Virus record (IMG/VR): IMGVR_UViG_3300024259_000010
Span: 1-64,000 of that record
Length of the DNA: 64,000 bases
Reading direction: 5' to 3' (one strand)
Part shown: positions 1 through 64,000 of the stretch, in pieces
Layout of the letters: every line of letters starts with the position of its first letter
Numbering within the stretch: position 1 is the first letter of the stretch
Translations under genes and position numbers: made by a program
The notes under the pieces: generated by a model
What the model was told of the DNA's origin: nothing
The model's database searches: none
The model's input: the letters and a program-made list of their open reading frames with translations, nothing else

Positions 1-328
1 TGCTTTACCTAAACCTTTATCAGCTTTCTTAATTCCTTTAAGAGCCAGACCAGGTAATGATCTATCAAACATCTTCTTACCGAATTTGCCAATAGCTTTA
101 CCAGCTTTAGATCCAGCGATCTTTCTAGCACCCATACCAACAAGACCACCAGTTGCTAAGAACTTACCAGTCTTTTTGAGAGCAGCTTTAGGATCATCAA
201 TTGCTTTACCTAAACCTTTATCAGCTTTCTTAATTCCTTTAAGAGCCAGACCAGGTAATGATCTATCAAACATCTTCTTACCGAATTTGCCAATAGCTTT
301 ACCAGCTTTAGATCCAGCGATCTTTCTA
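1..328. repeat. Exact 127-bp direct repeat (1-127 and 202-328, period 201 nt = 67 codons)
   Basis: Base-by-base comparison of the two copies. Confidence 0.95.
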
Positions 329-3300
329 CCAGCCATACCAACTAGTCCACCACCAAGAACAAATTTACCAAGTTTGGATTTACCAAGCTTAGAGTTTTTG
401 ATCTTACCAGCAATACCTCTAGCAGCCATACCAGCTAATCCACCAGTAGCCATGAATCCAGCGACCTTACCAAACTTAGTTTTCTTAAACTTAGCAAACG
501 CACCTTCATTTTCAATACCTTCTTCTTCAGCCTTCTGTCCAGCTTCCCACTCTTCTTTATCCTTAGATTCAACATCTTCAGGATTAAGTTTGCCATCAGC
601 TTTAGCAGTCATAAACTTGTTAGCCATATTTTCAGCTTCATCACGTTTACCAGCTTTGAATAAAGATTTGAATTTCTTAATGAATTTTTTAGATGCATTC
701 TTTTCAGTTAAAGTATCAACCCAGTTATCTAATTGTTGATCAGCGTAAGCACCAGCGGCCATCTTCTGAGCCTTCTCAGCTTTCTTACGAGCACGGCGCT
801 TCTTAAGTTTCTTAGCAAGTATAACACCACCTACAGCAACACCAGCAACAGCTAATGCAGGTAATAGGAATGGTGCGGCAGCAGCGGCAGCACCAGCAAT
901 GGCTGTACCAGCAGCAGCACCTGCTCCAGCAAGAGCAGTTCCAGCAGTAGCAAGACCTCCACCAATAGCACCAGCTCCAGGTATCATAGTAGCTAACCCT
1001 GCGGCTTTACTACCAAATCTACCAAGTGCCCCACCAATCTTTCCAAACTTACCTAGCTTACCAAGATTCTTGGCATTCTTACCAGCTTTCGCTAGCTTAG
1101 CAGCCTTCTTAAGTTTACGAGCATCATTCAAACCTTTGAGTGTATTACCAGTATCGATCGCTGCAGAGATACCCATACCAGCACTACCTATCTTACCTAG
1201 TAAACCAGGTTTGTTAGCTAGATTCTGCATACCACCTTTGAGCATACCTTTTGCATCAGTCATATTAGCAGGTACTTTAATTCCCCTACCTTCAGCCTTT
1301 GCCCGCATCTGATCTAAGTATGAACCTTTACGATGTACATCTTCTTCATAATCATCTTCAGCATCGTCAGCACTACCTTCATCATCCATAGGATTGGTTT
1401 TACTAGCAGTAACACCAGCACCAGCTTTACCTGTTGATCCAATAGTTGGAGAAGTTGTAGTAGGTTCACCTGTAGTTGCGCCTAACCGTGTGTTTAATAG
1501 TTCATACATAGTGGAATGGTTTTCATTAACGGCTGCAGTCAATTCTTCAACTTTAGCAGCAATACCTCCACTACCGAAACCCATATCACTTAGTTTGTCT
1601 TTAGCATATCCCATTGCTCCGAGACCTGCTTTACCTGCACCCTTAAGTATAGAGCCATAAACTCCAACACCACCAGACAACACATTAAGACCACTGCTTA
1701 GTAAACCACCAGCTCCAGCAAAAGCTCCACCTAGATCGATATGTATTCCACCACCTGCTCCATCATAAATGGATTTACCAGATACTGTAACTAGACCTTT
1801 TTCAATATCTTCTTCAGATACTAATACGTCTCCAGTTTCAGAATGAATAATAGGTGAGGTGATCTCAATTGTTTTCTTAAGTCTTTTTTTAGTCTCTGCA
1901 ACAAGACCATTCTTTTTCTGAACCTTAGCAGAAACTAGTGGACTACCAACTTTGACTTCATCTTTGATATATACATCGACAAAATTAGGTTGAACAGCTA
2001 AACCAGGAACTTTATCTACTAATGATTTAGCAAGACCGAATCCTCCTTTATAGAATTCTCCCATCATGTCTAAACCACTACCGGCTATATCACTACCACC
2101 TTTGGCTAATATACCAGCTAGATCTCCAAGTTTACCAACACCAGTTCCAAGAGCACTACCAATATGAGGAGCAGCTTGACCAGTTTTATCAGCAAGCCAT
2201 TTTCCAGCACCTTTAAGACCTTTACCATAAGTTGTAGCAACACCACCAATAGTTCGTCCAAGTTTTCCACCACCAGATTTAATACTATCTTTAGCACGTC
2301 TGGTAAGACTCTTAGTGATTTCCCACTTAGTATCTTTAATCATGTCGTCATCATCATAGCCTTCTAAACTTCCAGTTTTAGCGAATACTCTAAATGATTT
2401 ATGGAAACTCTTCATCTCTAGTAGTAATCTAGAACTACCAATAGTTTTATCTTGAACAGTACCGATTGCACCTAATGCCTGATCCTTTAAAGATACAGCA
2501 CCTTTTTTAAGACTATCAAAACCATACATGGATTTAATTGCCAAGGTTTCAGCCCCGGATGCAATCTTATCTCCAGCATACATTCCTTTAATCTGAGCTG
2601 TCTCTATACCAGATCTAGCTTTAGTCACATGACTGGATATATTCTTATCATAAAAGTCTTTAGATACGGTTCTATATTTAGTAAGCTTCTCTCTAACAGA
2701 TGCATTAGTAGCATCAACTGTTTTCATAAGTTTATCTTGGTCTTCTTCCGAGACAACCTTACTAATCTCTTTCATGATAACAGAGTTGATCTTTTTAACA
2801 CGATTGATAACAGATGGATCTTCATCTGGATCTAATTCAGCAGCTTTGTTTAATTCTTTTATTAAACTACCTACCTTCTTTTTAGATCTAGTTAGATCAG
2901 CTCTAAGTTCATCGGGAGTTTTGTTCAATTGAGTATCCACTGCATCAACTACTGATTTACCAGCACCTAATGCTTTGTCCTTAGCAGAGTTTCCAATACC
3001 AATAGCTTTTCGTTTAGCTGACATTCCAGCACTAGGCATAGGTCCAATAAAGTCAGGATCACTAGATGTGTTGCTATAAAGACCTTTCGCCTTTTTAACC
3101 CCTTGTTTAACACCATGTTTAGCTCTGTCAAATGTGTTTTTACCAGTACCCATGGCCATCTGTTTGATGGTCTGTTGTGGCATAGGTCCAACCATCTCAG
3201 GCATAGGTCCATAAAAATCACCAGAACTACTACCTGCAACATTAGAATACTCAGGTGTTTCAATTCTAATTGTCCCATCTGCATCAACAGAAATTGGAAC

Positions 3301-5442
3301 ATCACCAGATGCACCTGAAATATAAGATGCTAGATCTGATAGTAAGAATACATCTTTCTTAGCTAACTTACCAGCAGCGGTTTTAATACCGGATGGGATA
3401 TTCTGAGCAAATTTTGAATTGGTAAAATTCTCACGATCTTCTCGATAGATCATGCTTAAATCTTTTGTCTGTTGAGCTGCTCCACTTAGATAACTACCTG
3501 GATCATCAGAAAGAGAACTTTCTGCAATATTCAAACGTTCTTTATTGAGAGCATCTGTGGAAAACTGTCCACCATCTATATCATCAGCAAAAAGATTATA
3601 TGATCCAAATGTTTCCAATGTACTAGATAGTTTAGTTCTTAATGTATCATTAGCATGTGCATTATGAATACCATCATTGATAAAACTTATGTTTTCATTA
3701 TTTTTAGTACCATCAGGATTAAAATATAACGCCTTGATTAACTGGATAACTCCAATAGGGTCTTTAGTACCCTTCATCAATAATTTAATACCTCGTCCGG
3801 TCAGCTCTTCTGGTTTACTAGCAGCAGTTGCTTCTTTGATAACCCTTGCACTAATAGTAACACCATTGACAACAGCGTTGTTAATAACGATCAATAAATC
3901 TGCTTCTAATTCTTTATATGTGGATTCCTTGACAGTTGACGTCATTGCAGCTATACCTTTGATAGCACCCAATGATTCTACCATGGCTTGACCACGTTCT
4001 TCAGGAGCACCAAGCATAGATTCCATCACAGAAGCTTTAGCCTGAGTCATTGAAACGATTTTACGTTTCTTGGGATCATATGCTTCTATTTCAGTATCAG
4101 TACCAGTAACACTATCTCTAGTATTTTTAGCAATTTTAGATAACCATAGAGGTATGACTTCAACAATAGATTGACGAGTAGCGTTATCAAATACAGAGGC
4201 AGTTGCTCCTTCTTCAAATAATTGATTACCAACATCTACATGTGTCGTCTTCTTGGGTATCATGCTTCCGATTAATTTCAAAGCAATATTATCGGATTCA
4301 CTCAACGCATCGGCAAAGTCACGACCACCAGTTTTAATCTTACCTTGAACAGTTCTTGCTGTTCTATCGGCAACGTTAGCAATAGGTCTTATTTTATTAA
4401 GAGCAGATCTCCCACCGATCATACCAAGTATTGTACCAAGTGGACCACCGGCTTTCTCGCCTTTGCTTTTACCCATACCCAATTGATCAAAGTCGCCTTC
4501 CATGTCCCTTTCGACTTCCATGCTATCAATGAGCATATCGAGCATAGGAGCTAACTGTCCAATGTTATCAACCACATTTGATTTAAATCCTTTGGCAGCG
4601 CCTCCTACCATACCACTAATAGAATTAACACCAAGATCTGCAATCTTACCACGAACACTATGTTTTAAAAATTCAGCTGATTGTGCTTTTGCAACTTCAG
4701 GTAAGGCAGTGTTCTTACTAACAATAGCGATATTGTCTTCGAACGATTGTGCAAATACTTTCAATACACCAAGAGTTTCTTTAGAAGTATATAAGTGCAT
4801 ATACTTTAACTCAAGCATTTTCTTCATCCAGTCCTGCTGAGCAGAAACTGTATATTGATTTGAAAATTCTAACTGTGAGTTAATATTGGATAACATTCCA
4901 ATAGTGCTTCTATGTCTCAGTGAGTCACGGGCTTTGTCAACTAACTTATCAGCCCGAGCATGTTCATCTTTTGTCTTATTGGTACTAGCTATATTTGCAA
5001 ACATAGCTTCAGATGAAGCTCGTGCTACATTCTGTGCTTCAGAATATGCATCCTCAGCTTCAGCACCCGTTGATTCAGAAGAGGATTTGGAAAACTCTTC
5101 TAGCTTATTATACATGCCTTTTGGAATGAATCGTTTAGCAGTAGGTAAAGCAAATGCGGTAGCACGTTTTCCAACAATGGCAGCCTTACGTACTTCAGCA
5201 CGTAGTTCACCGAGTGATTCAACACCTATATCTTTTGCAGCACCTATGTCGCTTAATAACTCAGATGTATTAGGCATTGAACTTAAAATATGTTTACCAG
5301 CAGTTTTCATTCCAGCAGGTACACCTGCTTTAACTAAGTCTTTGGCATTGGAACCCAATCCCATTACTGGTTTTCTAGATTTAGGATCTATTGAATCAGA
5401 TGAATAATTACTGCTGAAATCATCAGCCATAAAACTATCCAT
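1..5442 (-). CDS. Large tail/tape-measure protein, phiKZ gp181-like (C-terminus beyond the window, >1814 aa)
   Basis: ATG at 5442 (alternative 5430). The frame was translated or spot-checked by hand to position 1 with no stop seen; it is absent from the ORF track because its stop is outside the window. Ala/Gly/Lys-rich, with FDNATRQSIVEVIPLWLSKI and VDVYIKDE segments resembling phiKZ gp181-type proteins, and a hydrophobic segment PFLLPALAVAGVAVGGVILA. Confidence 0.75.
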   Translation of the reverse strand, partial: MDSFMADDFSSNYSSDSIDPKSRKPVMGLGSNAKDLVKAGVPAGMKTAGKHILSSMPNTSELLSDIGAAKDIGVESLGELRAEVRKAAIVGKRATAFALPTAKRFIPKGMYNKLEEFSKSSSESTGAEAEDAYSEAQNVARASSEAMFANIASTNKTKDEHARADKLVDKARDSLRHRSTIGMLSNINSQLEFSNQYTVSAQQDWMKKMLELKYMHLYTSKETLGVLKVFAQSFEDNIAIVSKNTALPEVAKAQSAEFLKHSVRGKIADLGVNSISGMVGGAAKGFKSNVVDNIGQLAPMLDMLIDSMEVERDMEGDFDQLGMGKSKGEKAGGPLGTILGMIGGRSALNKIRPIANVADRTARTVQGKIKTGGRDFADALSESDNIALKLIGSMIPKKTTHVDVGNQLFEEGATASVFDNATRQSIVEVIPLWLSKIAKNTRDSVTGTDTEIEAYDPKKRKIVSMTQAKASVMESMLGAPEERGQAMVESLGAIKGIAAMTSTVKESTYKELEADLLIVINNAVVNGVTISARVIKEATAASKPEELTGRGIKLLMKGTKDPIGVIQLIKALYFNPDGTKNNENISFINDGIHNAHANDTLRTKLSSTLETFGSYNLFADDIDGGQFSTDALNKERLNIAESSLSDDPGSYLSGAAQQTKDLSMIYREDRENFTNSKFAQNIPSGIKTAAGKLAKKDVFLLSDLASYISGASGDVPISVDADGTIRIETPEYSNVAGSSSGDFYGPMPEMVGPMPQQTIKQMAMGTGKNTFDRAKHGVKQGVKKAKGLYSNTSSDPDFIGPMPSAGMSAKRKAIGIGNSAKDKALGAGKSVVDAVDTQLNKTPDELRADLTRSKKKVGSLIKELNKAAELDPDEDPSVINRVKKINSVIMKEISKVVSEEDQDKLMKTVDATNASVREKLTKYRTVSKDFYDKNISSHVTKARSGIETAQIKGMYAGDKIASGAETLAIKSMYGFDSLKKGAVSLKDQALGAIGTVQDKTIGSSRLLLEMKSFHKSFRVFAKTGSLEGYDDDDMIKDTKWEITKSLTRRAKDSIKSGGGKLGRTIGGVATTYGKGLKGAGKWLADKTGQAAPHIGSALGTGVGKLGDLAGILAKGGSDIAGSGLDMMGEFYKGGFGLAKSLVDKVPGLAVQPNFVDVYIKDEVKVGSPLVSAKVQKKNGLVAETKKRLKKTIEITSPIIHSETGDVLVSEEDIEKGLVTVSGKSIYDGAGGGIHIDLGGAFAGAGGLLSSGLNVLSGGVGVYGSILKGAGKAGLGAMGYAKDKLSDMGFGSGGIAAKVEELTAAVNENHSTMYELLNTRLGATTGEPTTTSPTIGSTGKAGAGVTASKTNPMDDEGSADDAEDDYEEDVHRKGSYLDQMRAKAEGRGIKVPANMTDAKGMLKGGMQNLANKPGLLGKIGSAGMGISAAIDTGNTLKGLNDARKLKKAAKLAKAGKNAKNLGKLGKFGKIGGALGRFGSKAAGLATMIPGAGAIGGGLATAGTALAGAGAAAGTAIAGAAAAAAPFLLPALAVAGVAVGGVILAKKLKKRRARKKAEKAQKMAAGAYADQQLDNWVDTLTEKNASKKFIKKFKSLFKAGKRDEAENMANKFMTAKADGKLNPEDVESKDKEEWEAGQKAEEEGIENEGAFAKFKKTKFGKVAGFMATGGLAGMAARGIAGKIKNSKLGKSKLGKFVLGGGLVGMAGRKIAGSKAGKAIGKFGKKMFDRSLPGLALKGIKKADKGLGKAIDDPKAALKKTGKFLATGGLVGMGARKIAGSKAGKAIGKFGKKMFDRSLPGLALKGIKKADKGLGKA

Positions 5443-5461
5443 ATTCTCTTCTTTAAACTTA

Positions 5462-6259
5462 TTATTTTTCATAAGTAATATCCATTATTACAAACTTAAA
5501 ATCACAAAATGCATTGAATACAATTTCAGTATTCTGCAATATCTGATCATCAGTTAATTTTTCGTCACCAGGCTTAACATCTTGCACTTCCTCAATAAAT
5601 GGAAATGTATGTAGTGATTTATGTACAAGTAATGTTCCAGCTTCTAGCAGAGGTTGAAATCTCCCGTGCTCCATAAACTTACCCAATTTATAGATAGACA
5701 TGTGGTCTAGGGTTGTTACAATCTCTTCACCATAATCATATATTTGGGGATCAGTTATAGTGATGTTCCAATATGACAATTCTTTTTTAAGACAAGCGAT
5801 TAATTTATCCTTACCTTCAAGTGACAATTTAACATCACCTGATCCGATGAATAGTTGAGGTACAACATTAGCATCACTACCCATTCTATTATTACCTAAA
5901 ACAGCATCGCCGAATTTAAAAAAGTATTTATAATAATCAGTAGGTGGGCTAATACGTTCTAGCTTTGCATGATTATCAGTGTCTTGCATAAATGCATATA
6001 TATCTTCATCTGTAAATTTTAGTTTAGGGAAATATTTCATAACTTTATCTTCTCTGCGATCATTATAATTCGACAGATTAGCTAGTAGATAATCATACTC
6101 TTCTTTGCTAGATATAAGACTCAATAATGCACCTATTCTAAAATCAAAAAAACAATCCAGATCAACATACAGCACACCTACTGGTGCAACTATATCTTCC
6201 ATTGCTGCACCGGCTATTGATTGTAATGAGGCTGCCACATCTCCAGACATTTTTTCCAT
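5462..6259 (-). CDS. Conserved phiKZ-like hypothetical protein
   Basis: ORF; GGAG RBS before ATG 6259; LYVDLDCFFDFRIGAL resembles a motif common in phiKZ-like phage proteins. Confidence 0.65.
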   Translation of the reverse strand: MEKMSGDVAASLQSIAGAAMEDIVAPVGVLYVDLDCFFDFRIGALLSLISSKEEYDYLLANLSNYNDRREDKVMKYFPKLKFTDEDIYAFMQDTDNHAKLERISPPTDYYKYFFKFGDAVLGNNRMGSDANVVPQLFIGSGDVKLSLEGKDKLIACLKKELSYWNITITDPQIYDYGEEIVTTLDHMSIYKLGKFMEHGRFQPLLEAGTLLVHKSLHTFPFIEEVQDVKPGDEKLTDDQILQNTEIVFNAFCDFKFVIMDITYEK

Positions 6260-7730: not shown

Positions 7731-7814
7731 GGCCGCATGGCGGAATGGCAGACGCAACGGTCTTAAAAACCGTTTTCTTCGGAAGTGTGAGTTCGACTCT
7801 CACTGTGGCTACCA
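7731..7814 (+). tRNA. tRNA-Leu(UAA)
   Basis: Acceptor GGCCGCA/TGTGGCT, D arm GCGGAATGGCAGACGC, anticodon arm ACGGT-CTTAAAA-ACCGT, long variable arm, TTCGA T loop, encoded CCA. Confidence 0.95.
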
Positions 7815-13784: not shown

Positions 13785-14372
13785 ATGATACAAAGTATTA
13801 CATTTGCAAAGGAACTCTTTTGTTTCAAAGTAGGAGATTCATATGACTTCAAACCATTAACATTATTGGTCGGAGATCAAGGGTGTGGTAAAAGCACTAT
13901 ACTGAATCTATTGGGTAAGCAAGGTATGTATGGTAGTACGCAAATGGTAAACATTGAAGTTGGTAAGAATGACAATGGTTTCATTCACCATGATTTTGAA
14001 ATGGCTAGTCATCGTACTAATACTAGCGGACCAAATCCATACTCACCTGATTACAATGACCAGTTGATTAGAATGATTGATTCTAAGTCTATGTCTCACG
14101 GTGAAGCCACTAAGGTTTCCTTTGAAGATTTTGATAGAATTGAAACAGATATTCTTATATTGGATGAACCCGATATGTCACTGTCTATGCGAAGTGTACA
14201 TATGTTAGTGGAACATGTTAAACGATGGATTGATTCAGGTAAGCAAGTTATCTTGAGTTGTCATCATCCGTATCTTATAGAAGCTTTTGATGAAGTATTA
14301 TCCTTGGAACATAAACAATGGATGTCATCTAAAGAATTTATAGAATCACATAATTTAAAGATGGACCTGTAG
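13785..14372 (+). CDS. ABC/AAA-type ATPase
   Basis: Walker A GDQGCGKS, signature-like SHGE, Walker B ILILDEP, H-loop SCHH. Confidence 0.88.
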   Translation: MIQSITFAKELFCFKVGDSYDFKPLTLLVGDQGCGKSTILNLLGKQGMYGSTQMVNIEVGKNDNGFIHHDFEMASHRTNTSGPNPYSPDYNDQLIRMIDSKSMSHGEATKVSFEDFDRIETDILILDEPDMSLSMRSVHMLVEHVKRWIDSGKQVILSCHHPYLIEAFDEVLSLEHKQWMSSKEFIESHNLKMDL

Positions 14373-14439
14373 CTCAGTTGGTCAGAGCAGGACACTCATA
14401 ATGTCTTGGTCGGGGGTTCAAGTCCCTCCGGGTCCACCA
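14363..14439 (+). tRNA. tRNA-Ile2(CAU) (lysidine type; elongator Met not excluded)
   Basis: Acceptor GGACCTG/CGGGTCC, anticodon arm GGACA-CTCATAA-TGTCT, overall pattern like E. coli ileX, encoded CCA. Confidence 0.9.
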
Positions 14440-16346: not shown

Positions 16347-16480
16347 TCTATATAACGACTTTATAAATGCAGGAGTGTAAGTTGATCCTTATTACCTCTG
16401 AATTTCTACAAACATATAACACTTCGGTTATATGGTTATATGGACTACGACTTTTTAATAAAAAGTTATATAGGAAGTCA

Positions 16481-17041
16481 ATGGATAAAAAAGAATTATT
16501 TAACAGTAATGGATATAGAGGGAAAAAAGGTAATGATAAAACATTGGACCAATTCTGTAATAATATTATTGGTTTAATAGGACATGATATTACGGTATTA
16601 GAGGTTGGATCTTACATGGGTCATTCCGCAGCTTATTTTGATAAATACTTTAGCTTTGTGTTTTGTGTAGACCCATGGTTTCATCCTAAAAACCAATATA
16701 ATAACCGTCATATACAATTAGCAGAAGAGATCTTTGATGATAGGATCACTCCAACTATTATAAAATGTAAAGGTCTATCTGAAGATATTGTCAAGGAATT
16801 TTCTGACAATTCCATTGATCTGATATATATTGATGCACAGCATGACTATGAATCAGTTACTCAAGACATTGGTTTATGGCTTACAAAATTAAAGAAAAAT
16901 GGAATAATGAGTGGGCATGATTATAATTTCTATCATAAAGATGTGGTCCGTGCTGTAGATGAATGCTTTGGAGTACCAACAGTATTACATGGTCATAATT
17001 GGCTTATTGTCGATCCTCATAGTAAATATAAAAAACTTTAA
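16481..17041 (+). CDS. Class I SAM-dependent methyltransferase (Methyltransf_24-like)
   Basis: VLEVGSYMGHS, IDLIYIDAQHDYESV, GIMSGHDY. Confidence 0.88.
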   Translation: MDKKELFNSNGYRGKKGNDKTLDQFCNNIIGLIGHDITVLEVGSYMGHSAAYFDKYFSFVFCVDPWFHPKNQYNNRHIQLAEEIFDDRITPTIIKCKGLSEDIVKEFSDNSIDLIYIDAQHDYESVTQDIGLWLTKLKKNGIMSGHDYNFYHKDVVRAVDECFGVPTVLHGHNWLIVDPHSKYKKL

Positions 17042-17123: not shown

Positions 17124-17168
17124 AATATACTACACTCCCTATTACGGGGAGTGTAGTATATTTTTTTA
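17124..17168. terminator. Bidirectional terminator hairpin at a convergent junction
   Basis: 16-bp IR between convergent genes; loop ATTAC is the reverse complement of the GTAAT loop of the other copies. Confidence 0.8.
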
Positions 17169-18035
17169 TTACAGCGCTGCTGCTAAGATAAATAATTGTT
17201 CCAACTCTTCTTGAGTTTTACCTAATACTTGTCTAATAGACTCAACTAGAGGATTACCAAGATTAACTTCTTGTTTATATTCCCATTGAGTTAATGCGAT
17301 TTCACGTTCAACTACATCTTCAATAGAAGTAATAGCAGTAGTAACATCTGATGGCATAATACCAATCTGAATGAGACCAAGTCTAAACTGTACCATAGAT
17401 ACTACTTGAGGAATATACACATGTTCAATTTCTTCAGCAATAACATTCTTTTGTCCAGGTGAAGTAATACCGTTGTACAATTCTACATCTTCAGCATACA
17501 AAGCCACAATACGTTCATGTTGACCCTGCGACACTCCCTGTTTCTCAACTGGGGTAGGCAAACTAACTAATTCAATATCATCAGAAAAATCTAAATCAGT
17601 TTTTAATTGACCAAGATCTTCTGGGAATTTGTATAGACCAATCGATCCGCTTTCTAAATAATCAGACTGCTTTTCGAATGCCTTATGTTCTGGTTCAAAT
17701 GATGCTTCCAGTGTATCGAGTACAGTATTGATATCTTCAATGCCATATTCGGCACATGCTGATAAGAAGCGATCCACTGGATTACGAACCAACATAATGG
17801 TAGAAGATGCATTTTCCTTTTCAATAGTTGGACACATCCATTGTACACGTGTATTGCCAAGAGTTTTACCCTCTGGTAGATGAAGCCCACCTGAAGGCTT
17901 TGGATTGTAAATCTTTTCACTAATTACTGGATGAAATGATTTGATGATAGCTCTTGCAATTGTTTCAGATCCCGATTTAGGATTAAGAATAACTGCGACA
18001 TTATTTGCATTTAAATATATTTTTTCCATTTTCAT
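17169..18035 (-). CDS. Sulfotransferase-like domain fused to a C-terminal phage tail-associated domain
   Basis: 5'PSB-like NPKSGS, 3'PB-like VRNPVDRFLSA; C-terminal PQVVSMVQFRLGL...WEY...LEQLFILAAAL domain. Confidence 0.7.
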   Translation of the reverse strand: MKMEKIYLNANNVAVILNPKSGSETIARAIIKSFHPVISEKIYNPKPSGGLHLPEGKTLGNTRVQWMCPTIEKENASSTIMLVRNPVDRFLSACAEYGIEDINTVLDTLEASFEPEHKAFEKQSDYLESGSIGLYKFPEDLGQLKTDLDFSDDIELVSLPTPVEKQGVSQGQHERIVALYAEDVELYNGITSPGQKNVIAEEIEHVYIPQVVSMVQFRLGLIQIGIMPSDVTTAITSIEDVVEREIALTQWEYKQEVNLGNPLVESIRQVLGKTQEELEQLFILAAAL

Positions 18036-18041
18036 TTACCT

Positions 18042-19010
18042 CTAATTAGTTACTTCCCAACCCTTATTTTGGGCTATAGTTACATCACATCCTGCAGACC
18101 CTGGATTGTTCATAATTTGTAGTTTACCATTTCCATAGTCTCCACCTAATGATACAGCATCTGGAAGATCGTCCATTAGTTGATTAAGTGTATCAATGTC
18201 CAATCCGTTACCGTTTAAATATACAGCAATTACATAACCAGATCCGTTAGATACATTACCAATCGCTACTACATCAGTTAGACTTACTGATGTAAGATTG
18301 GGACAATTACTTATATTCACCCCTTGTACTTCTGTAATATTGCTAATTGTAATAGATTCTAGATTGGCATTATCTTGGACATTAAAATGGTTGACTATAT
18401 TTTTATCTGACAATTCTAGTTCCGTTATTGCATTACAGTAGCGAATCTCTATATATTCCATATCAGTAGGCAACTCACTAAAATCAATAGTTTCCAAGTT
18501 CTCACATTGTAGTTTAATAAAATCGAGAGACTCTTGTCCAGAAAGATCGATATTGGATAATGCACCTGTTGTTATTAAGTCTAATGATTCCAATGGTATA
18601 GTATTGATATGCAACTCAGATATACTCATGGCAGATATTTCTAATTTTGTGATAACATCTGCTTGGACAAGGTTTGCTGCATCTAAAGCATAAATATACA
18701 ATGGCTGTGCTGTTAAGCCATAAGCACTGTCTAGCGAAGCGCTGTGTATTTGCTGCCCATCCACATCGGTAACAACACCCTTGTATTCATATGCTAATGA
18801 ACCAGCGGTGGTGTTTTTAAATATATAATCTACGCTCGTCGGTTCGACATATCTACCTGCAATGATTTTGATTACGTTAGGTGGTGGTAAAGATGATGCT
18901 CCACCTCCACCGCCTCCACCAGGTGCTTCTTCTGATAGTACTTCAACTCCTGCTATCTTTACTTTGGCTCCTTGTTCCATCTCAAGGTCACCGCTTATTT
19001 TCATAGTCAT
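18042..19010 (-). CDS. Leucine-rich-repeat protein, probably virion/tail-associated
   Basis: LxxLxLxxN/C repeats and a poly-Gly linker; on the late-gene strand. Confidence 0.7.
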   Translation of the reverse strand: MTMKISGDLEMEQGAKVKIAGVEVLSEEAPGGGGGGGASSLPPPNVIKIIAGRYVEPTSVDYIFKNTTAGSLAYEYKGVVTDVDGQQIHSASLDSAYGLTAQPLYIYALDAANLVQADVITKLEISAMSISELHINTIPLESLDLITTGALSNIDLSGQESLDFIKLQCENLETIDFSELPTDMEYIEIRYCNAITELELSDKNIVNHFNVQDNANLESITISNITEVQGVNISNCPNLTSVSLTDVVAIGNVSNGSGYVIAVYLNGNGLDIDTLNQLMDDLPDAVSLGGDYGNGKLQIMNNPGSAGCDVTIAQNKGWEVTN

Positions 19011-19057: not shown

Positions 19058-19354
19058 TTAGTCTTCTGTCCACAACACCTGTTCTACCCAGTTGGTAGTA
19101 GATGCTTTAAACACTTGGAGACTAACACCATTGGTAACAGATACCAAGCGAGCAGCTTCTCCAATGTATACGGTAACAGTATCACCTGATTTAGTGGAAG
19201 TAATACCACTTGTAACAAGACGACCAGTATGAGCGCTAACTACTGGAACGTCATTGGGTTTAAGTGCAACCCCTTTAACGTTACGAACCTGTGCATAAGC
19301 ACCGATAGCAATAGAGCAAATTAATAATGTGAATAATCTAATTTTCTTCTTCAT
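19058..19354 (-). CDS. Signal-peptide protein, paralog of 47943-48722
   Basis: MKKKIRLFTLLICSIAIGAYA signal; shared PVVSAHTGRL motif. Confidence 0.75.
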   Translation of the reverse strand: MKKKIRLFTLLICSIAIGAYAQVRNVKGVALKPNDVPVVSAHTGRLVTSGITSTKSGDTVTVYIGEAARLVSVTNGVSLQVFKASTTNWVEQVLWTED

Positions 19355-39821: not shown

Positions 39822-39899
39822 GCCCCGGTAGCTCAGTTGGATAGCAGCAACGGCCTTCTAAGCCGTAGGTCACTGGTTCGAGTCCAGTTCGGGGTACCA
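39822..39899 (+). tRNA. tRNA-Arg(UCU)
   Basis: Acceptor GCCCCGG/TCGGGGT, anticodon arm ACGGC-CTTCTAA-GCCGT, TTCGA T loop, encoded CCA. Confidence 0.93.
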
Positions 39900-46347: not shown

Positions 46348-47886
46348 ATGGAAGAAGTTAAGAACATTGTAGAAGTCGAATCATTGTCAGAACTAAAGAT
46401 TCTTGTCAATGGAAAAAAGCATGTTGTAGTAAAGTTATGGGCACCTTGGTGTGGTCCTTGTAAAACCTTTGCACCTATTGTAAACAAAGTTAACAGTGAA
46501 CTCGAATTAGACGTAAGTATTGTTGGAGTAGATGTTGATGCTGTCCCGATTGTTGCGGCTGTGTATGGAGTACGTAGTATTCCTACTCTACTAATGTTTG
46601 AAGATGGCGAATGTAGGAAACAGATTCAAGGTATAGTTCCTGAGCACCAGCTCAAAGAACTTATCGCTGATTTTGTTAATGGTGTAGAAGAAGAATTAAC
46701 TGAGGAGGTACAAGTTGAAAAACCCATTGATACAGTTGAAACTGAAGTTGAAGTCGCTACAGAGAGTCAGACAGATGAGAAGGGAACGCACCAAGATGAT
46801 GATGAATCGGATGTGGTTGGAGAATTAGAAGAAGCTCCATCTATTCCTGAAGAAGTCGTCGAGGCTGAAGTACCAGGTGATAGTGAACCACCATCGGTGA
46901 AGCAGGAAGGATCTATCTTTGCCGCCTCTCCCGATGCAACATTAGTTACTGAAGAAACTCCAGGTATTGGTAAGGTGACTGCTATTGAACGTGGTGATGA
47001 AGGAACTGTATTAGATGTGCCCAATCAAGAGCAAGGGACTGTGTCAGATGTTAAGGTTGAAAACAGAGCATTGACTGAAAAAGAGATACAGGAAGAACTT
47101 GATGCTGTTAAGCCTATTGATGTTGTAATACACCCTGAGTTGCTTACTAAAGATGAGGTAGTGGAAGAAGCAGTTGCCACTAGTGATCGTGTTAAGCAAA
47201 CCTCACCAGGTATTGTATTACCTACTGAAGATGAAACAGTTCTTGAATGTCCTATCCAAGATTGTGCCTATAATGAAGCTTGTGAATGTGCATTTGCTGA
47301 AGCTACTATTCAGACTATTGCACCACCATGTGGTAATGTACCGAATGAATGTCCTGCAGTAATTAATAATACCTCAGATCAAGAAAAATCACTACCACCT
47401 GATCAAGATTGGAATGAAGAAAAAGATATTGATGTAGATCGTCGTCATAATCATTTCAAGATTAAAGCAACAGCTGCACATGTTCACGCTATGTATCAAG
47501 ATCATGAACACTATCATGAAGGCGATGCTGGATTGGATCTATTCATTGCTGAAGATCAGATTATCCCAGTTGGTCTTGGTAACAAGATTGATCTATGTAT
47601 TGTCTGTGAACCGGAAGATGGTATTGCATATGAGCTATGGCCTCGTAGTAGTATCTCTAAGACTCCTCTCCGTCTTGCCAATAGTATTGGTTTGATTGAT
47701 GGTGGTTACCGTGGACACATCATGGCTGTGGTTGATAACTTTGGTCCAGTTGGCTATGAGATTAACGCTGGTACTCGTTTGTTCCAACTTGTTGCTGCTG
47801 ATAAGATGCCTATTACATTTGAGATGGTAACTGAAGTATCAGAGACCGCTCGTGGTACAGGTGGGTTCGGTAGTACTGGAGCTTAA
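46348..47886 (+). CDS. dut: Thioredoxin - acidic linker - Cys-rich module - dUTPase fusion
   Basis: N-terminal WAPWCGPC; C-terminal AGLDL, PRSS, GLIDGGYRG, QLV, RGTGGFGSTG; a single 512-aa ORF. Confidence 0.92.
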   Translation: MEEVKNIVEVESLSELKILVNGKKHVVVKLWAPWCGPCKTFAPIVNKVNSELELDVSIVGVDVDAVPIVAAVYGVRSIPTLLMFEDGECRKQIQGIVPEHQLKELIADFVNGVEEELTEEVQVEKPIDTVETEVEVATESQTDEKGTHQDDDESDVVGELEEAPSIPEEVVEAEVPGDSEPPSVKQEGSIFAASPDATLVTEETPGIGKVTAIERGDEGTVLDVPNQEQGTVSDVKVENRALTEKEIQEELDAVKPIDVVIHPELLTKDEVVEEAVATSDRVKQTSPGIVLPTEDETVLECPIQDCAYNEACECAFAEATIQTIAPPCGNVPNECPAVINNTSDQEKSLPPDQDWNEEKDIDVDRRHNHFKIKATAAHVHAMYQDHEHYHEGDAGLDLFIAEDQIIPVGLGNKIDLCIVCEPEDGIAYELWPRSSISKTPLRLANSIGLIDGGYRGHIMAVVDNFGPVGYEINAGTRLFQLVAADKMPITFEMVTEVSETARGTGGFGSTGA

Positions 47887-47942: not shown

Positions 47943-48722
47943 TTAATCAGCAACAACAGTAACTGTATATACAACACCGTTATCGGTAAACTTAAGAACT
48001 CCACCTACCACAGATAGTGTATCTTCTGCATTAAGCTCAACATCACCAGGTGCAGTAGCAGTATCAACATAAGCCTTAACAGACTCAGCACTAGCTACAT
48101 TAGAATCAGTAGCAGTAGCCATAGTATCGTCATCAATGATAGTAACTAGACCAGTAACTGCCGTAGATAAATCCTCCGCTACTGTAACAGGTGGGCCATA
48201 TGGTCCTTGTTCAGTTTCTCCATTTCCAATCGCGAAACCCGCCTGTGTAAGATCTATGTCGGTGTGTCTTGCCCAATCCCCAACTTTAGAGCCTAGCGTG
48301 TCACTAACATACCATCTATCAGTCGCCCACCAGAATGTCTTCGTAGCCCCTACGTAAACATTTTCCCCATTATACTGAGTCTCGGCTGTAGGGTATACAC
48401 CTGCTGGTATTCTAGCGTCACCGCCTGTTACAACAATACCAATAGTTTGTCCTCCCACAGCAGCTGCTGGTGTAGCATCAGTGATAGCTGTCTCTAAAGC
48501 ATTAGACACAACTAGGTCTGCTGCAATATATGCATCTGCAGTAGCTACAACGTTAGTAAGTTCTGCAAGATCAACCCCTGATGAGATCAACCGACCAGTA
48601 TGTGCGCTAACAACTGGGATATCACCTGGTACAAGCCTAATCCCTTTAATATTTCTAGTTTGCCCCATGGCACCACCTGCGATTAAGCAAGCTAATGTAA
48701 TTAGTAATCCTGTCTTCTTCAT
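47943..48722 (-). CDS. Signal-peptide-bearing, Thr/Ala/Val-rich protein (virion fibre-like)
   Basis: MKKTGLLITLACLIAGGAMG signal; PVVSAHTGRL shared with 19058-19354. Confidence 0.7.
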   Translation of the reverse strand: MKKTGLLITLACLIAGGAMGQTRNIKGIRLVPGDIPVVSAHTGRLISSGVDLAELTNVVATADAYIAADLVVSNALETAITDATPAAAVGGQTIGIVVTGGDARIPAGVYPTAETQYNGENVYVGATKTFWWATDRWYVSDTLGSKVGDWARHTDIDLTQAGFAIGNGETEQGPYGPPVTVAEDLSTAVTGLVTIIDDDTMATATDSNVASAESVKAYVDTATAPGDVELNAEDTLSVVGGVLKFTDNGVVYTVTVVAD

Positions 48723-48822
48723 AATTATAACCTTTCCTATTCCCACATACTCATACGTCAGTGTCGAGTATTATATGTCTCATATAATGATTCTTTATAT
48801 ATTTAATTTTTTTCATCATTGA

Positions 48823-52879: not shown

Positions 52880-53308
52880 GGGCCTGCCTGGTTTCGACAG
52901 TACAATGGAATTCATAACTACAAGTAGAGGATGATCGTCGGCCTCTTTAAACATCGGTCAACAATTAGTTGGAACGAAAGTGATCAACTTCCCTAGTGCT
53001 CGCGCTCTTGCAGCGTAATCACGTCCCTTTTAATTAAGGGAGGGCTTGAGGATACCTAGAATTCTCTGGGATGAAGTATCTTCTAACTTAGGTATACCCA
53101 AAGAGGTGTGCTTAATACAATTAAGCAGAGAGCCCTATAGCAGCAATGCTATTTAAATAGTTAGGATCACTATATGGAAAAGAGATCTGAGTGTGAGTAG
53201 TGCTGTATATACTATTTGGTTTACTAGTAAAGTAAAACTAGGTAAAAACTTGTAACAACGTTATGTTGGAAATTATATTGGACGAGGGTTCGACTCCCTC
53301 CAGGTCCA
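52880..53308 (+). ncRNA. ssrA: tmRNA; tag (A)GTKVINFPSARALAA at 52971-53018
   Basis: 5' GGGCCTGCCTGGTTTCGACAG; 3' GGACGAGGGTTCGACTCCCTCCAGGTCCA with a G3-U wobble; P2 pairings TACAAGT/ACTTGTA and ATAAC/GTTAT; internal ORF ending ALAA-stop. Confidence 0.95.
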
Positions 53309-60905: not shown

Positions 60906-63900
60906 TTACAGATCGCCTTCTGCATCAACTATTAAGAATTGGAAACCAATATCACGGTCGATTTCGATCACACCAGTATTGGAATTATAAACAAGAATAT
61001 GTTTAAGATTCAATACAGTACCGTCATCTACATGTACCAATGTTTGGTCTTCCATATTTGAATTAAGTCCGAATGTATCTACAGATTTTACAAAATGTCC
61101 GAGCTGACTAGTAATAGCATCTGCTATCTGAGTTAACGCGAAAATATTATTAACTGTATATTCATCTACAATCTTAACAATAGTTTGCCTGATTGAATGT
61201 AAGATCTTATCGTCTCCAATAACACGTCGTACTACAAATAATTTAAAGTGAATACTAAACTCTAAATCAAATTGTGTTATGAATGGTGAACTTACTTTGA
61301 AGTCTGCTTTTCCAATAGATTTACTTGGTCTATAATAAATATCAGTATTAGGGATCAACCTCGGTTTAGAAGTTGCCACAACACCACAGTTATCAAGAAT
61401 AAGCTGTTTCATTGAATTAACATATTCCTCAGTACTTTCATAATTAGCATATGAATTTAGATCACCATATAAAATACGTTTATTAATATGGATCATATAC
61501 ACACGATAATATGTTTCTCTACTTAGTTGAACAGGTGTTAAATCTGATAATGTTTTAACATTACCTTTGATAGACTCATATACAGGAGGTGATACAATCT
61601 TTGTCACTGGTCCAGTAAAGCCTAGTGTCAGTATAACATCTCTTACCAATTGACTACTATCAATATCAACGGGTTTAGATATAGATATATCAGCTGCCCC
61701 ACCAGTATCATCACCTGCTTGACCAGCATCAATAGTGAATGTAGTATCATCTATTACAATTACAGAACTTACATATTCCCCATCTGGTAGATCATCAGTA
61801 TTAGTAGAGCTTGCAACCGTTAATGTATCACCTGTTGTTAAAAAATGATCAGCTAATGTAAATGTAACGGTATTACCAGATGAAGCAAATGGTACAGCAA
61901 GTCCTGTAAATGGTGTTTCATTAGATAGATCGCTTCTATTTAATACAACAAACTGTGATAAGTCAATACCATTATTATCCAGTATACCTGTAGCTTCATA
62001 TTTAAATGAAATTGTATACGTAGGTTCACCTTCCGAGTCAGGATATCTAAATGGAGCCCATCCAAATTTAGGTGGTACCATGATACCACCATCATTGGCT
62101 TCAGCAGGAGCAGATGTTAATGGTACCCCAGACTCTTTTAAATACCATGTATCAGTATCAAAGGTTAATGTAAAGTTACCAGATACCCATTCAGGTAATC
62201 CGCCATTTAAAGCAAACGTGAAGTCTGTAACATGTGTATTGAATGCATAATTATCTAACGTAATGATACGTGGAAATGCACGTATTAAAGAGTTAGCTAC
62301 GATATTATTATCTAATTCAATATAACCGTAATAATCTTCTCCAACATCGATCTTTGTTATCTTTACAATCTCTCCAGTACGAGAGATTTCAAAGTCTTCA
62401 AGATATGATACACCGTCTTCATCTGGTCTATACATATATTGACCAACTTGTTTTATCTTAATAAAGTCAGCACCAGATCCAGGATCGTATAAAACAAGAG
62501 AACCATTAGTATCTCTAAGATAACTGTCAGTTGAATATTTTTGATTTATATTATCGGGATAAGTCTCAAATTCATGCTGATCATATGAAATATCAACAGC
62601 AGTGAACAGCTCTTTAATAGTAGACCCGAATTTTACATTTAGATTATAAATAGACAATGTCTCAAATCCAATAGTAGCACTAGTTGTCAAATATTCATTA
62701 TCTATTCCATCTAAGGTGGGAATAATAGAACCATTGAGCAATAGTGATATTGTGATATCATCATTAAGTCTAATAAACCCAGTTACACTATTTTCAAACT
62801 TAAACTGAATGAGTTCGGGAGTGTTTATCCAACCATTAGTTTCAAGTTCAATATCATAAGTATATAACCCATTTTCATCAAATACAGCATCAACACCAGT
62901 ATCATTATTATTCTTAAAAACAGTATTATTAAGTTTATTAACAGTAGATGCAACCACAGCAACATTAGTAGGTACTAATGGAGTAGGCAGTTCTTGTGCA
63001 TATGATGCTTTAACTTCAACACTAATAATATATTTCAAAATAGAAGTATTGCGATCACCAGCATCGGCATCAACTATTTCCATACGTTCGGCATTAATTA
63101 CAACATTGTTAATTGACAGTTGTATTTCAGCAGCAGCCTCTGCAACAAAATCTCTATTAATAATCTCTGGTGATTCTAAATCAAATGTTTCACCAAATGG
63201 TATATTATTTATAGTTGATACTTTATTATAGAAAGGATTGTATGTATATGTACTATTATTAAGATCATCAATAAATGCTTGTTGTGTTAGTGGGTTTTCT
63301 TTTTTGCTCTCCAATAATAACACTTCCGCATCACTCATCGGTTTAGCAATATCAGTATCTTTATTATAAAGGTACATAACATCAGGTGTCATTAGAAATG
63401 ATCCATCACGATATCGTCTAATATTTTTAATTTTATAATCATTACCAGATTCAATATCAGAAGTACGTAAAAGTGTTGTAATATCACCAGATGGTACAAT
63501 AGCACCTTTAACATCTCTAAGTTCTTTATAGCATAAATAAATTCTAGATGTAATACCATCTTTAAACTTACTAACTTTCATTCCAACATTAAGATCTTCA
63601 AAGTAGCCAACTAAATCCATAGGTGTGATTAACAATTCATCATTAAACGTATCATAAATAACACGGCGACGTAGATTAGTATAATCCATTCCAACACTAC
63701 CACCAATAATACGTTGATCAATTATCCCAATGTTAATATTATTTCTATTGGTTAACATAGATGAATATTTATCAGTACTTTCAACACCAGTAAGTGGGAA
63801 CTTGGCTGGAATTAATGCACCTGCTAATGGAGAAGTATCGATATCTACCTCACCTTTAGTAGCTAGAATTTCAATCTTGAGTTTATTACCTAACTGATCC

Positions 63901-64000
63901 TGTGTCATATATACAAATGGGATAGCTAGTTTGATAGACTTAGTTTCCTGCATAACCGTAACAATAGCTGTTGGCACATCCTCAGAATCTACATCATAAA
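60906..64000 (-). CDS. Baseplate wedge-like protein, phiKZ-type (N-terminus beyond the window, >1030 aa)
   Basis: Frame stays open to the window end; IEILATKGEVDID, GGSVGMDYTNLRRRVI, LITPMDL and DGITSRIY segments are typical of jumbo-phage wedge proteins. Confidence 0.7.
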   Translation of the reverse strand, partial: YDVDSEDVPTAIVTVMQETKSIKLAIPFVYMTQDQLGNKLKIEILATKGEVDIDTSPLAGALIPAKFPLTGVESTDKYSSMLTNRNNINIGIIDQRIIGGSVGMDYTNLRRRVIYDTFNDELLITPMDLVGYFEDLNVGMKVSKFKDGITSRIYLCYKELRDVKGAIVPSGDITTLLRTSDIESGNDYKIKNIRRYRDGSFLMTPDVMYLYNKDTDIAKPMSDAEVLLLESKKENPLTQQAFIDDLNNSTYTYNPFYNKVSTINNIPFGETFDLESPEIINRDFVAEAAAEIQLSINNVVINAERMEIVDADAGDRNTSILKYIISVEVKASYAQELPTPLVPTNVAVVASTVNKLNNTVFKNNNDTGVDAVFDENGLYTYDIELETNGWINTPELIQFKFENSVTGFIRLNDDITISLLLNGSIIPTLDGIDNEYLTTSATIGFETLSIYNLNVKFGSTIKELFTAVDISYDQHEFETYPDNINQKYSTDSYLRDTNGSLVLYDPGSGADFIKIKQVGQYMYRPDEDGVSYLEDFEISRTGEIVKITKIDVGEDYYGYIELDNNIVANSLIRAFPRIITLDNYAFNTHVTDFTFALNGGLPEWVSGNFTLTFDTDTWYLKESGVPLTSAPAEANDGGIMVPPKFGWAPFRYPDSEGEPTYTISFKYEATGILDNNGIDLSQFVVLNRSDLSNETPFTGLAVPFASSGNTVTFTLADHFLTTGDTLTVASSTNTDDLPDGEYVSSVIVIDDTTFTIDAGQAGDDTGGAADISISKPVDIDSSQLVRDVILTLGFTGPVTKIVSPPVYESIKGNVKTLSDLTPVQLSRETYYRVYMIHINKRILYGDLNSYANYESTEEYVNSMKQLILDNCGVVATSKPRLIPNTDIYYRPSKSIGKADFKVSSPFITQFDLEFSIHFKLFVVRRVIGDDKILHSIRQTIVKIVDEYTVNNIFALTQIADAITSQLGHFVKSVDTFGLNSNMEDQTLVHVDDGTVLNLKHILVYNSNTGVIEIDRDIGFQFLIVDAEGDL

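What the first reader, a model, noticed from the sequence alone, without database searches (positions are those of the whole stretch)
17169..18035. Sulfotransferase domain fused to a phage tail-associated domain in a late-strand island
The N-terminal ~200 aa has both PAPS-binding motifs (PKSGS; RNPVDRFLS). The C-terminal ~80 aa resembles the small domain found beside tail-fibre genes. It is co-oriented with an LRR gene and a signal-peptide gene. Inference: the virion carries or assembles with a sulfotransferase or sulfo-glycan-binding module, fitting a host with sulfated surface polysaccharide, or it sulfates virion glycans.
Basis: partly seen in the sequence, partly recalled or inferred. Interest (0 to 1): 0.65.

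Follow-up and report, generated by a model that had tools for sequence, protein, structure and literature searches.

The report
Sulfotransferase-like tail-fibre accessory protein
A marine jumbo phage encodes, right after a leucine-rich-repeat receptor-binding gene, a protein that joins a compact sulfotransferase-type domain to a tail-fibre-chaperone-type domain; it belongs to a large, undescribed viral family that usually sits behind fibre genes, which hints that phages may sulfate or otherwise mature their fibres with such enzymes.

Summary
Window 17169-18035(-) is a real 288-aa ORF. Residues 1-200 carry a 5'-PSB-like loop (NPKSGSET) and a 3'-PB motif (RNPVDRFLS). They model with high confidence (pLDDT 92.7) as a sulfotransferase fold: the 16 best solved-structure matches are all sulfotransferases. 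Residues 205-288 match phrog_6034, a domain of ~160-aa proteins encoded directly after tail-fibre genes in five cultured phages.

The protein is not an orphan. A full HMMER scan found 210 cluster representatives. They are either stand-alone N domains or N domains fused to interchangeable C domains: the phrog_6034 type, DUF4376 (the domain of proven Alteromonas tail-fibre chaperones), Phage_tail_APC and others. In about two thirds of viral loci the gene follows, within 0-15 nt, a fibre or adhesin gene, often an LRR protein with the same C-terminal cap as the window's.

My best reading is a fibre-docked accessory enzyme or chaperone that acts during assembly. Two caveats apply. The family's conserved His (128/148) is Ala in this protein, so it may bind PAPS without transferring sulfate. 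Nothing shows that it is in the virion or that the host has sulfated glycans. I found no paper describing this fusion. I rate it a new variant of known kinds, of moderate to high interest.

The parts
17169..18035 (-). CDS of the two-domain protein (P0001, 288 aa; a second in-frame ATG at codon 3 gives the 286-aa form on record)
17436..18035 (-). N-terminal compact sulfotransferase-like domain (residues 1-200)
   Evidence: Model pLDDT 92.7. VIA-align: the top 16 chains are all sulfotransferases, best HS 6-OST 5t03 Z 8.4 and HS 2-OST 3f5f Z 7.8, over residues 11-196. ESM Atlas viral PF03567 cluster: TM 0.73, rmsd 2.7. 210 relatives.
17961..17984 (-). 5'-phosphosulfate-binding (PSB) loop NPKSGSET with Lys20
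   Evidence: In the family, K 132/148 (+8 R), G22 103, S23 121.
17757..17789 (-). 3'-phosphate-binding (PB) strand-turn-helix VRNPVDRFLSA with Arg84 and Ser92
   Evidence: R84 145/148, P86 142, F90 146, S92 134. This is the only stretch that Pfam PF03567 aligns in this protein.
17679..17681 (-). Ala119 at the position of the family's conserved His (HF..Q motif). His117 lies two residues upstream.
17172..17423 (-). C-terminal helical domain (residues 205-288) of the phrog_6034 type, shared with small proteins encoded after tail-fibre genes
18042..19010 (-). Upstream partner gene: 322-aa LRR protein with a short N-terminal segment, a Gly7 linker, a low-confidence beta region, an LRR solenoid (~130-322) and a conserved C-terminal cap (..IAQNKGWEV..)
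19058..19354 (-). First gene of the island: 98-aa protein with an N-terminal signal-peptide-like segment
17124..17162 (.). 16-17 bp G+C-containing hairpin with T-runs on both strands. It is a bidirectional terminator-like site that closes the island and the convergent methyltransferase gene.

Best explanation
The gene encodes a tail-fibre accessory protein with two parts. It is translated in one operon directly after an LRR-tipped receptor-binding protein. The C-terminal helical domain is of the kind carried by small proteins encoded behind fibre genes, and I infer that it docks the protein onto the newly made fibre in the infected cell. The N-terminal domain is a minimal PAPS-type (Sulfotransfer_2-like) sulfotransferase fold. 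In the family as a whole I infer that it uses host PAPS to sulfate the fibre, or something attached to it, during maturation. In this member the donor-binding residues (Lys20, Arg84, Ser92) are kept but the family's conserved His is Ala. It may therefore bind PAP(S) and the fibre without efficient transfer. Shown by computation: the ORF, both domains, the fold, the family, the gene order and the repeated fusions. Inferred: binding to the LRR protein, action in the cytoplasm, the acceptor, and activity.
For: Fold and motifs; BFVD matches to phage 'sulfotransferase family' proteins. 25/148 relatives hit PF03567, 2 hit PF00685 and 1 hits PF13469. The donor-binding residues are conserved across 148 divergent viral sequences (about 30% identity), which argues for selection on PAPS binding. 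Fibre link: the gene starts 6 nt after the LRR gene. In about 24 of roughly 36 distinct IMG/VR and other loci, the homologue lies 0-15 nt behind a co-oriented 277-1045-aa gene. Those upstream genes carry LRR, collagen, Laminin_G_3, fn3, phage tail repeat, Mtd_N or BppL_N domains, or hit tail-fibre, baseplate or minor-tail PHROGs. Ten of them are LRR proteins sharing the window protein's C-terminal cap. Chaperone link: the same N domain is fused to at least two unrelated C domains. One is the phrog_6034 type (23+ clusters). The other is DUF4376 (30 clusters, best E 1e-21). Phage_tail_APC occurs once, and there are several further types. DUF4376 is the domain of the experimentally required tail-fibre chaperone gp27 of Alteromonas phage V22 and of gp9 of phage A5 (PMC7289586, PMC10579305). 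In phiM5 the phrog_6034-type gene follows the host-binding fibre and, unlike its neighbours, is not flagged as found in the particle proteome.
Against: Ala119 replaces the His kept in 128/148 relatives and in nearly all viral-locus homologues. A few relatives have also lost Lys20 or Arg84, so catalysis is not universally needed. This protein is below Pfam's PF03567 cut-off (19 vs 22 bits, only 20 residues aligned). Foldseek against PDB gave no match at E<=1e-3, and the VIA Z-scores (8.4-5.5) are middling on that tool's own scale. No sulfated phage fibre is known to me. The phage encodes no APS kinase, so it depends on host PAPS. The C-domain type does not track the LRR partner: LRR genes are followed by phrog_6034-type, DUF4376-type and stand-alone forms. 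No binding evidence was obtained.
Confidence: 0.55

Rival explanations
1. Pseudo-enzyme chaperone. The sulfotransferase fold is only a scaffold, or a nucleotide-sensing body, of a tail-fibre chaperone or transient cap. No sulfate is ever transferred, at least in this member.
For: Ala119 stands in place of the conserved His. Some relatives have degenerate PSB/PB motifs: P0063, P0097 and P0127. The position and the C domains are typical of fibre chaperones.
Against: Lys20, Arg84, Ser92 and the His are conserved across most of a very divergent family. That is hard to explain without ligand binding or catalysis. Stand-alone N domains without any chaperone-type domain occupy the same position.
Confidence: 0.25
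2. Host-surface modifying enzyme. The protein sulfates host envelope glycans or their precursors inside the infected cell, for superinfection exclusion or to prevent progeny being trapped. It lies next to the receptor-binding gene for the same reason that seroconversion genes lie next to tailspike genes in temperate phages (the analogy is from my own knowledge).
For: Its closest solved folds are carbohydrate sulfotransferases, HS 6-OST and 2-OST. Phage sulfotransferases are usually filed as auxiliary or moron genes (phrog_3347), and their function is called unclear (PMC10580990).
Against: Repeated fusion to fibre-chaperone-type domains and near-zero intergenic distance to fibre genes in lytic-type contigs point to the fibre itself. 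There is no membrane anchor or signal peptide on this protein.
Confidence: 0.12
3. One reading: the protein is a virion component at the fibre tip that binds sulfated host glycans, or carries enzyme activity into adsorption.
For: DUF4376 chaperones have been proposed to stay on fibres as transient caps (PMC10579305). A catalytically weakened sulfotransferase fold could act as a sulfo-ligand binder.
Against: PAPS is an intracellular donor, so catalysis at the cell surface is implausible (established biochemistry). The phiM5 homologue of the C domain is not flagged in the particle proteome. There are no data on the host or its glycans.
Confidence: 0.08

Closest known systems
DUF4376 tail-fibre chaperones of Alteromonas phages (V22 gp27, A5 gp9)
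   Same: They are encoded immediately downstream of the fibre gene, and the conserved domain is C-terminal. Thirty clusters of the present family carry exactly this Pfam domain behind the sulfotransferase-like domain.
   Different: The window protein's own C domain is of the phrog_6034 type and shows no detectable relation to DUF4376 (hhalign probability 0.2%). The Alteromonas chaperones have short N-terminal parts (DUF4376 begins at residue 92 of 195 in gp27 and 138 of 239 in gp9), and the papers report no enzyme-like domain in them.
Small post-fibre proteins of cultured phages (phrog_6034: Curvibacter P26059A_0029, Sinorhizobium phiM9 gp137/138, phiM5 gp21, PBC5 orf15, Microcystis Mae-JY30)
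   Same: The C-terminal ~80 aa are homologous (E 1e-13 to 1e-24 with the family HMM; 29-38% identity). The position after a fibre gene is the same.
   Different: They are ~160 aa, with an unrelated ~80-aa N-terminal part instead of a ~200-aa sulfotransferase-like domain. All are annotated as hypothetical.
Phage 'sulfotransferase family' proteins (Prochlorococcus P-SSM7, Synechococcus ACG-2014f and S-T4, Roseobacter SIO1 gp5.1, Ralstonia phiRSL1) and the viral PF03567 cluster of the ESM Atlas
   Same: They share the compact ~190-240-aa fold (BFVD E 1e-4 to 1e-2; Atlas TM 0.73).
   Different: Sequence similarity to them was too low for tblastn. They have no chaperone-type C domain, and I did not check whether they lie beside fibre genes.
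Sulfotransfer_2 carbohydrate sulfotransferases (HS 2-OST 3f5f, HS 6-OST 5t03; HNK-1ST/CHST type)
   Same: They share the PSB Lys, the RxP....S PB motif, a C-terminal Q...Y..D helix and the overall fold. The review PMC11625862 defines the class by the PSB Lys/Arg, the PB Ser and the sheet architecture.
   Different: The window domain is about 195 aa against 250-300 aa, so the substrate-binding inserts are missing. It has no membrane anchor. No catalytic base is identified, and the score is below the Pfam cut-off.
Bacterial operons predicted to hydroxylate and sulfate collagen-like or T4 tail-collar proteins (Iyer et al. 2010, PMC2938197)
   Same: A sulfotransferase is genetically linked to a fibre-like, sometimes collagen-like, protein proposed as its substrate. 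In L008 the homologue sits between two collagen-LRR genes.
   Different: Those are cellular operons with 2OG dioxygenases and PAPS synthetases. The present family lacks these partners and was found almost only in viral contigs.

Membership tests
PAPS-dependent sulfotransferases (Sulfotransfer_2-like) | PSB loop with catalytic Lys/Arg after the first strand | tested here: met
   Lys20 in NPKSGSET follows strand 13-16.
PAPS-dependent sulfotransferases (Sulfotransfer_2-like) | 3'-phosphate-binding strand-turn-helix with Arg and Ser (R-x7-S) | tested here: met
   Arg84 ends strand 78-84 and Ser92 lies in helix 86-96.
PAPS-dependent sulfotransferases (Sulfotransfer_2-like) | Sulfotransferase alpha/beta fold | tested here: met
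   The top 16 VIA-align rows are all sulfotransferases, Z 8.4-5.5 over residues 11-196. Atlas TM 0.73 to a viral PF03567 cluster. Foldseek against PDB was only weak.
PAPS-dependent sulfotransferases (Sulfotransfer_2-like) | Pfam PF03567 gathering score | tested here: not met
   19.0 bits against a cut-off of 22, E 0.0016, residues 74-93 only. 25 of 148 relatives match at E<=0.01, best 3.5e-7.
PAPS-dependent sulfotransferases (Sulfotransfer_2-like) | Catalytic base (His or Glu) | tested here: inconclusive
   The only family-wide conserved His (128/148) is Ala119 here, with His117 nearby. Position 65 is Gln here and Q or H in the family. In PF03567 the base lies in non-conserved regions (PMC11625862). 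No residue-level superposition was available.
PAPS-dependent sulfotransferases (Sulfotransfer_2-like) | PAPS binding and sulfate transfer | not testable with these tools
   Needs biochemistry.
Tail-fibre chaperone / assembly proteins | Encoded directly downstream of, and co-oriented with, the fibre or RBP gene | tested here: met
   6-nt gap after the LRR gene. The same order holds in about two thirds of related loci.
Tail-fibre chaperone / assembly proteins | Domain shared with proteins in that position in cultured phages (phrog_6034 type) | tested here: met
Tail-fibre chaperone / assembly proteins | DUF4376 domain (the V22 gp27 type, the only one of these with experimental proof) | tested here: not met
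   No PF14301 hit for this protein. hhalign probability 0.2% between the two C-domain types. Thirty sister clusters do carry it.
Tail-fibre chaperone / assembly proteins | Binds the fibre and is needed for its folding | not testable with these tools
   Needs co-expression and pull-down.

The most novel reading that the evidence does not exclude
A widespread, almost exclusively viral family of receptor-binding-protein-dedicated sulfotransferases. They are tethered by swappable chaperone domains and post-translationally sulfate tail-fibre tips, for example the conserved Tyr of the ..IATAKGY.. cap of LRR fibres. That would add a new kind of virion modification that tunes host recognition. The window's pair, with Ala for the His and Trp for the Tyr, would be a member that has lost the reaction.
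Probability: 0.25. Interest if true: 0.85.

Novelty: new variant of a known kind. Interest (0 to 1): 0.62.

Why it matters
Phage sulfotransferases are annotated often, but their role is openly called unclear (PMC10580990). This analysis gives them a testable context. A large viral family of minimal sulfotransferase-fold proteins is tied, by gene order and by repeated domain fusion, to receptor-binding proteins and their chaperones. If the enzymes act on the fibres, sulfation would be a new virion modification that affects host range. If they are inert, they are a new class of fibre chaperone built on an enzyme fold. Either way the pairs (LRR fibre plus partner) are small, soluble-looking and easy to express. 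They also define a recurrent LRR-tipped fibre type in marine and other environmental phages.

Tried and rejected
- **Word-index protein searches.** Searches with the whole protein, with the N domain and with the LRR protein found only the proteins themselves. The full HMMER scan was needed.
- **PDB by sequence.** The single-protein search and two profile searches gave nothing significant. The only hits were chance centrin matches and a 3'-PB-only match to SgdX2.
- **NCBIfam.** Nothing meaningful.
- **Nearest cultured phages.** Megablast of the 8 kb around the gene and tblastn of N domains against cultured phages gave no match.
- **The search for related loci.** It failed with the 148-sequence alignment. 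It worked with a 24-sequence subset.
- **Cellular genomes.** The genome-contig scan gave one weak hit. It used a single peptide pattern, so absence from cellular genomes is only indicative.
- **Complex prediction.** LRR protein (residues 40-322) with the whole protein: no verdict, score 0.00, controls not run (after two busy errors). This is not evidence for or against binding.
- **Shared late-promoter motif.** None was evident by eye upstream of the minus-strand genes.
- **Host inference.** A RecJ-like gene gave only ~35% matches to Firmicutes phages, which is uninformative.
- **Tree of N domains.** It is poorly resolved (18 of 142 branches well supported), so I use only the lower bound of at least 9 changes for each main C-domain type.
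- **Read mapping.** Only short low-depth contigs were found. One 209-nt contig from a metatranscriptome lies inside the gene, which does not prove transcription.

Full report
**1. What is there**

The window is the first 64 kb of a 235,833-bp IMG/VR virus record. The record is 91% complete and about 35% G+C. Seawater metagenomes hold the stretch around the finding.

The ORF at 17169-18035 on the minus strand is real and encodes 288 aa. It is the last of three co-oriented genes:
- a 98-aa protein with a signal-peptide-like N terminus (19354-19058);
- a 322-aa LRR protein (19010-18042);
- the ORF itself, which starts 6 nt after the LRR stop, behind a GAGG ribosome site.

A 16-17-bp hairpin with T-runs on both strands (17124-17162) closes the island and the convergent methyltransferase gene at 16367-17041. 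The island lies on the strand of the large tail-fibre gene at 1-5472 (phrog_3201). It is surrounded by plus-strand genes, and further along that strand are genes for a RecJ-like exonuclease, a thioredoxin-dUTPase fusion and a DHH phosphoesterase. 'Late' expression is therefore plausible but not shown.

**2. The N-terminal domain**

Direct family scans are weak. PF03567 (Sulfotransfer_2) scores 19 bits against a cut-off of 22, and only residues 74-93 align. phrog_3347 (galactose-3-O-sulfotransferase) gives E 0.0076. Word-index searches found only the protein itself, so the full HMMER scan was justified.

That scan returned 210 representatives at E<=1e-3 and 76 at <=1e-10. The alignment of 148 of them (A1) has these features:
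- a consensus N.K.GSSS loop;
- VRDPVERFRSA;
- HF.PQ;
- a C-terminal LT..Q..RV...YA.D..L helix;
- Lys20 in 132/148 (Arg in 8 more), Ser23 in 121, Arg84 in 145, Pro86 in 142, Phe90 in 146, Ser92 in 134, and Gln172, Tyr180 and Asp183 in nearly all.

Scanned one by one, 25 members hit PF03567 (best E 3.5e-7), 2 hit PF00685 and 1 hits PF13469.

With this alignment AlphaFold2 gives a confident model, pLDDT 92.7 and pTM 0.79. An exhaustive structural comparison with 48,161 PDB representatives puts sulfotransferases in all of the first 16 places over residues 11-196. The best are heparan sulfate 6-OST (Z 8.4, 158 residues aligned, rmsd 3.8) and 2-OST (Z 7.8). These Z values are middling by the tool's own calibration. 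Foldseek against PDB gave only weak rows, although those rows were enriched in sulfotransferases.

Two further comparisons remove reasonable doubt that this is a compact sulfotransferase fold with the donor-binding residues. The ESM Atlas search finds a purely viral cluster, 92% PF03567, at TM 0.73 and rmsd 2.7 over residues 3-190. BFVD finds phage 'sulfotransferase family' proteins.

By the criteria of a recent review, three features define the class: the PSB Lys/Arg, the PB-helix Ser and the sheet architecture (PMC11625862). All three are met.

**3.

The family has one conserved His, in HF.PQ, present in 128/148 members and in nearly every homologue from viral loci. In this protein it is Ala119, with a one-residue insertion and His117 two residues upstream. 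The closest relatives keep the His.

Whether this His is the catalytic base is not known. In PF03567 enzymes the base lies in non-conserved regions, and I had no residue-level superposition. A few relatives have also lost Lys20 or Arg84. The activity of this particular member is therefore doubtful. The strong conservation elsewhere argues that the family at large binds PAPS.

**4. The C-terminal domain**

Residues 205-288 match phrog_6034 (E 7e-17) and phrog_14311. tblastn against 50,697 phage records finds the domain in the C-terminal halves of ~160-aa proteins in these phages:
- Curvibacter P26059A, directly after 'tail fiber protein';
- Sinorhizobium phiM9, two tandem copies after the gp12-like tail-collar protein;
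- Sinorhizobium phiM5, directly after the 'putative host-binding tail fiber', and, unlike its neighbours, not flagged as detected in the particle proteome;
- Sinorhizobium PBC5, orf15;
- Microcystis Mae-JY30, one gene beyond the putative tail fibre.

A profile of the domain scores these proteins at 1e-13 to 1e-24. BFVD adds more small phage proteins, one of them named tail-fibre-assembly-like. The function of the domain is inferred from position only.

**5. The fusion is a family trait**

Of the representatives, about 59 are stand-alone N domains (up to about 235 aa) and about 81 carry a C-terminal extension. The extensions fall into separate sequence clusters:
- 30 of the DUF4376 type;
- 23 of the phrog_6034 type, plus a related trio;
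- groups of 5, 4, 3 and 2;
- 11 singletons.

The two main types are unrelated by profile-profile comparison (probability 0.2%). Pfam confirms DUF4376 in 30 members (best E 1e-21), and Phage_tail_APC and Gp6_C-III in one each.

[quoted passage not shown] It is also the domain of gp9 of phage A5, and these chaperones were proposed to act as transient fibre caps (PMC7289586, PMC10579305).

On a poorly resolved tree of the N domains, well-supported branches alone force at least 9 gains or losses for each main C-domain type. The enzyme-like domain has therefore been joined to fibre-chaperone-type domains many times.

**6. Gene order**

Fifty IMG/VR loci and two metagenome contigs were examined with a crude ORF caller. 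In about 24 of roughly 36 distinct loci, the homologue lies 0-15 nt (sometimes overlapping) behind a co-oriented gene of 277-1045 aa.

The 24 upstream proteins carry these features:
- LRR families (at least 6 members, best E 3e-21);
- Laminin_G_3 (4) and fn3 (3);
- collagen, phage tail repeat, Mtd_N, BppL_N and F5/8-type-C domains;
- hits to tail-fibre, central-fibre-J, minor-tail, baseplate-wedge and virion-structural PHROGs.

Ten are LRR proteins that share with the window's LRR protein a C-terminal cap (..GNPG...D.PSIATAKGYTV.G; in the window ..NNPGSAGCDVTIAQNKGWEV). The L007 partner aligns with the window protein at E 4e-7. In L008 the homologue sits between two collagen-LRR genes, an unmistakably fibre-like architecture.

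The window LRR protein models as a solenoid over residues ~130-322 (pLDDT 80-97). Its weak PDB matches are nearly all LRR domains.

The family was found almost only in viral sequence. The Atlas clusters are 85-100% viral, and one pattern-limited scan of 185,579 species genomes gave a single weak hit. The phage has one copy of the gene and no APS kinase.

**7. Interpretation**

The best-supported reading is a fibre-associated accessory protein that acts inside the infected cell. The chaperone-type domain, or in stand-alone forms the enzyme-like domain itself, engages the receptor-binding protein. The sulfotransferase-like domain binds host PAPS and, in most members, probably transfers sulfate to the fibre or to something on it.

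Extracellular catalysis is implausible because PAPS is intracellular. 'Host with sulfated polysaccharide' has no evidence either way.

The rivals are a pure pseudo-enzyme chaperone, which is favoured for this member by Ala119, and a host-glycan modifying enzyme placed next to the RBP gene. A prediction of sulfated collagen-like or tail-collar proteins in bacterial operons exists (PMC2938197). I found no paper that links a sulfotransferase with a tail-fibre chaperone.

One speculative observation (n=1) deserves a record. The His-bearing enzymes are paired with caps reading KGY (KGH in one lineage), while the window pair has Ala for the His and Trp for the Tyr.

**8. Verdict**

This is a new variant that combines two known kinds, phage sulfotransferase-family proteins and tail-fibre chaperones. 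It is backed by a family-wide pattern and is directly testable by co-expression, PAPS binding and mass spectrometry.

Noticed in passing
window 19058-19354(-) and 47943-48746(-): The 98-aa first gene of the island shares its first 51 residues with the N terminus of a 267-aa minus-strand protein 29 kb away (57% identity, E 1e-18). The shared part is a signal-peptide-like segment followed by ..PVVSAHTGRL..SG.. This is a shared leader or anchor module on two otherwise different proteins.
   Followed up: partly
window 52880-53308(+); also 7731-7814, 14363-14439, 39822-39899: The phage encodes a tmRNA (tag GTKVINFPSARALAA) and tRNA-Leu(taa), tRNA-Met(cat) and tRNA-Arg(tct).
   Followed up: no
window 17261-17280: One low-depth contig from another seawater sample differs at 5 bases within 20 nt. 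All five changes are non-synonymous but conservative (E252D, Y253F, K254N, N258D, L259I) and lie in the C-terminal domain. This may be a microdiversity hotspot or a second strain.
   Followed up: partly
L043 4815-5865, L044/L045 4977-6027: Some viral contigs carry two tandem stand-alone sulfotransferase-like genes (177 and 175 aa) behind one 420-aa tail-type gene. The second copy has Asn in place of the PB Ser.
   Followed up: no
window 16367-17041(+): A Methyltransf_24 (PF13578, E 8.5e-17) gene converges on the island and shares its terminator hairpin. PHROGs labels its relatives DNA methyltransferase.
   Followed up: no
window 46348-47886(+): A 512-aa protein joins an N-terminal thioredoxin-type domain (residues 4-114) and a C-terminal dUTPase (389-511). 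The ~270 aa between them are unassigned.
   Followed up: no
window 1-5472(-) and 60906-63977(-): Very large minus-strand genes lie at both ends of the window. One is a tail-fibre protein of more than 1824 aa (phrog_3201). The other is a 1023-aa protein of phrog_3248 (unknown function).
   Followed up: no
proteins P0063, P0097, P0127 (relatives, not in the window): A few family members have lost the PSB Lys and/or the PB Arg/Ser while keeping the C-terminal Q..Y..D helix. They look like decayed, probably non-catalytic copies.
   Followed up: no
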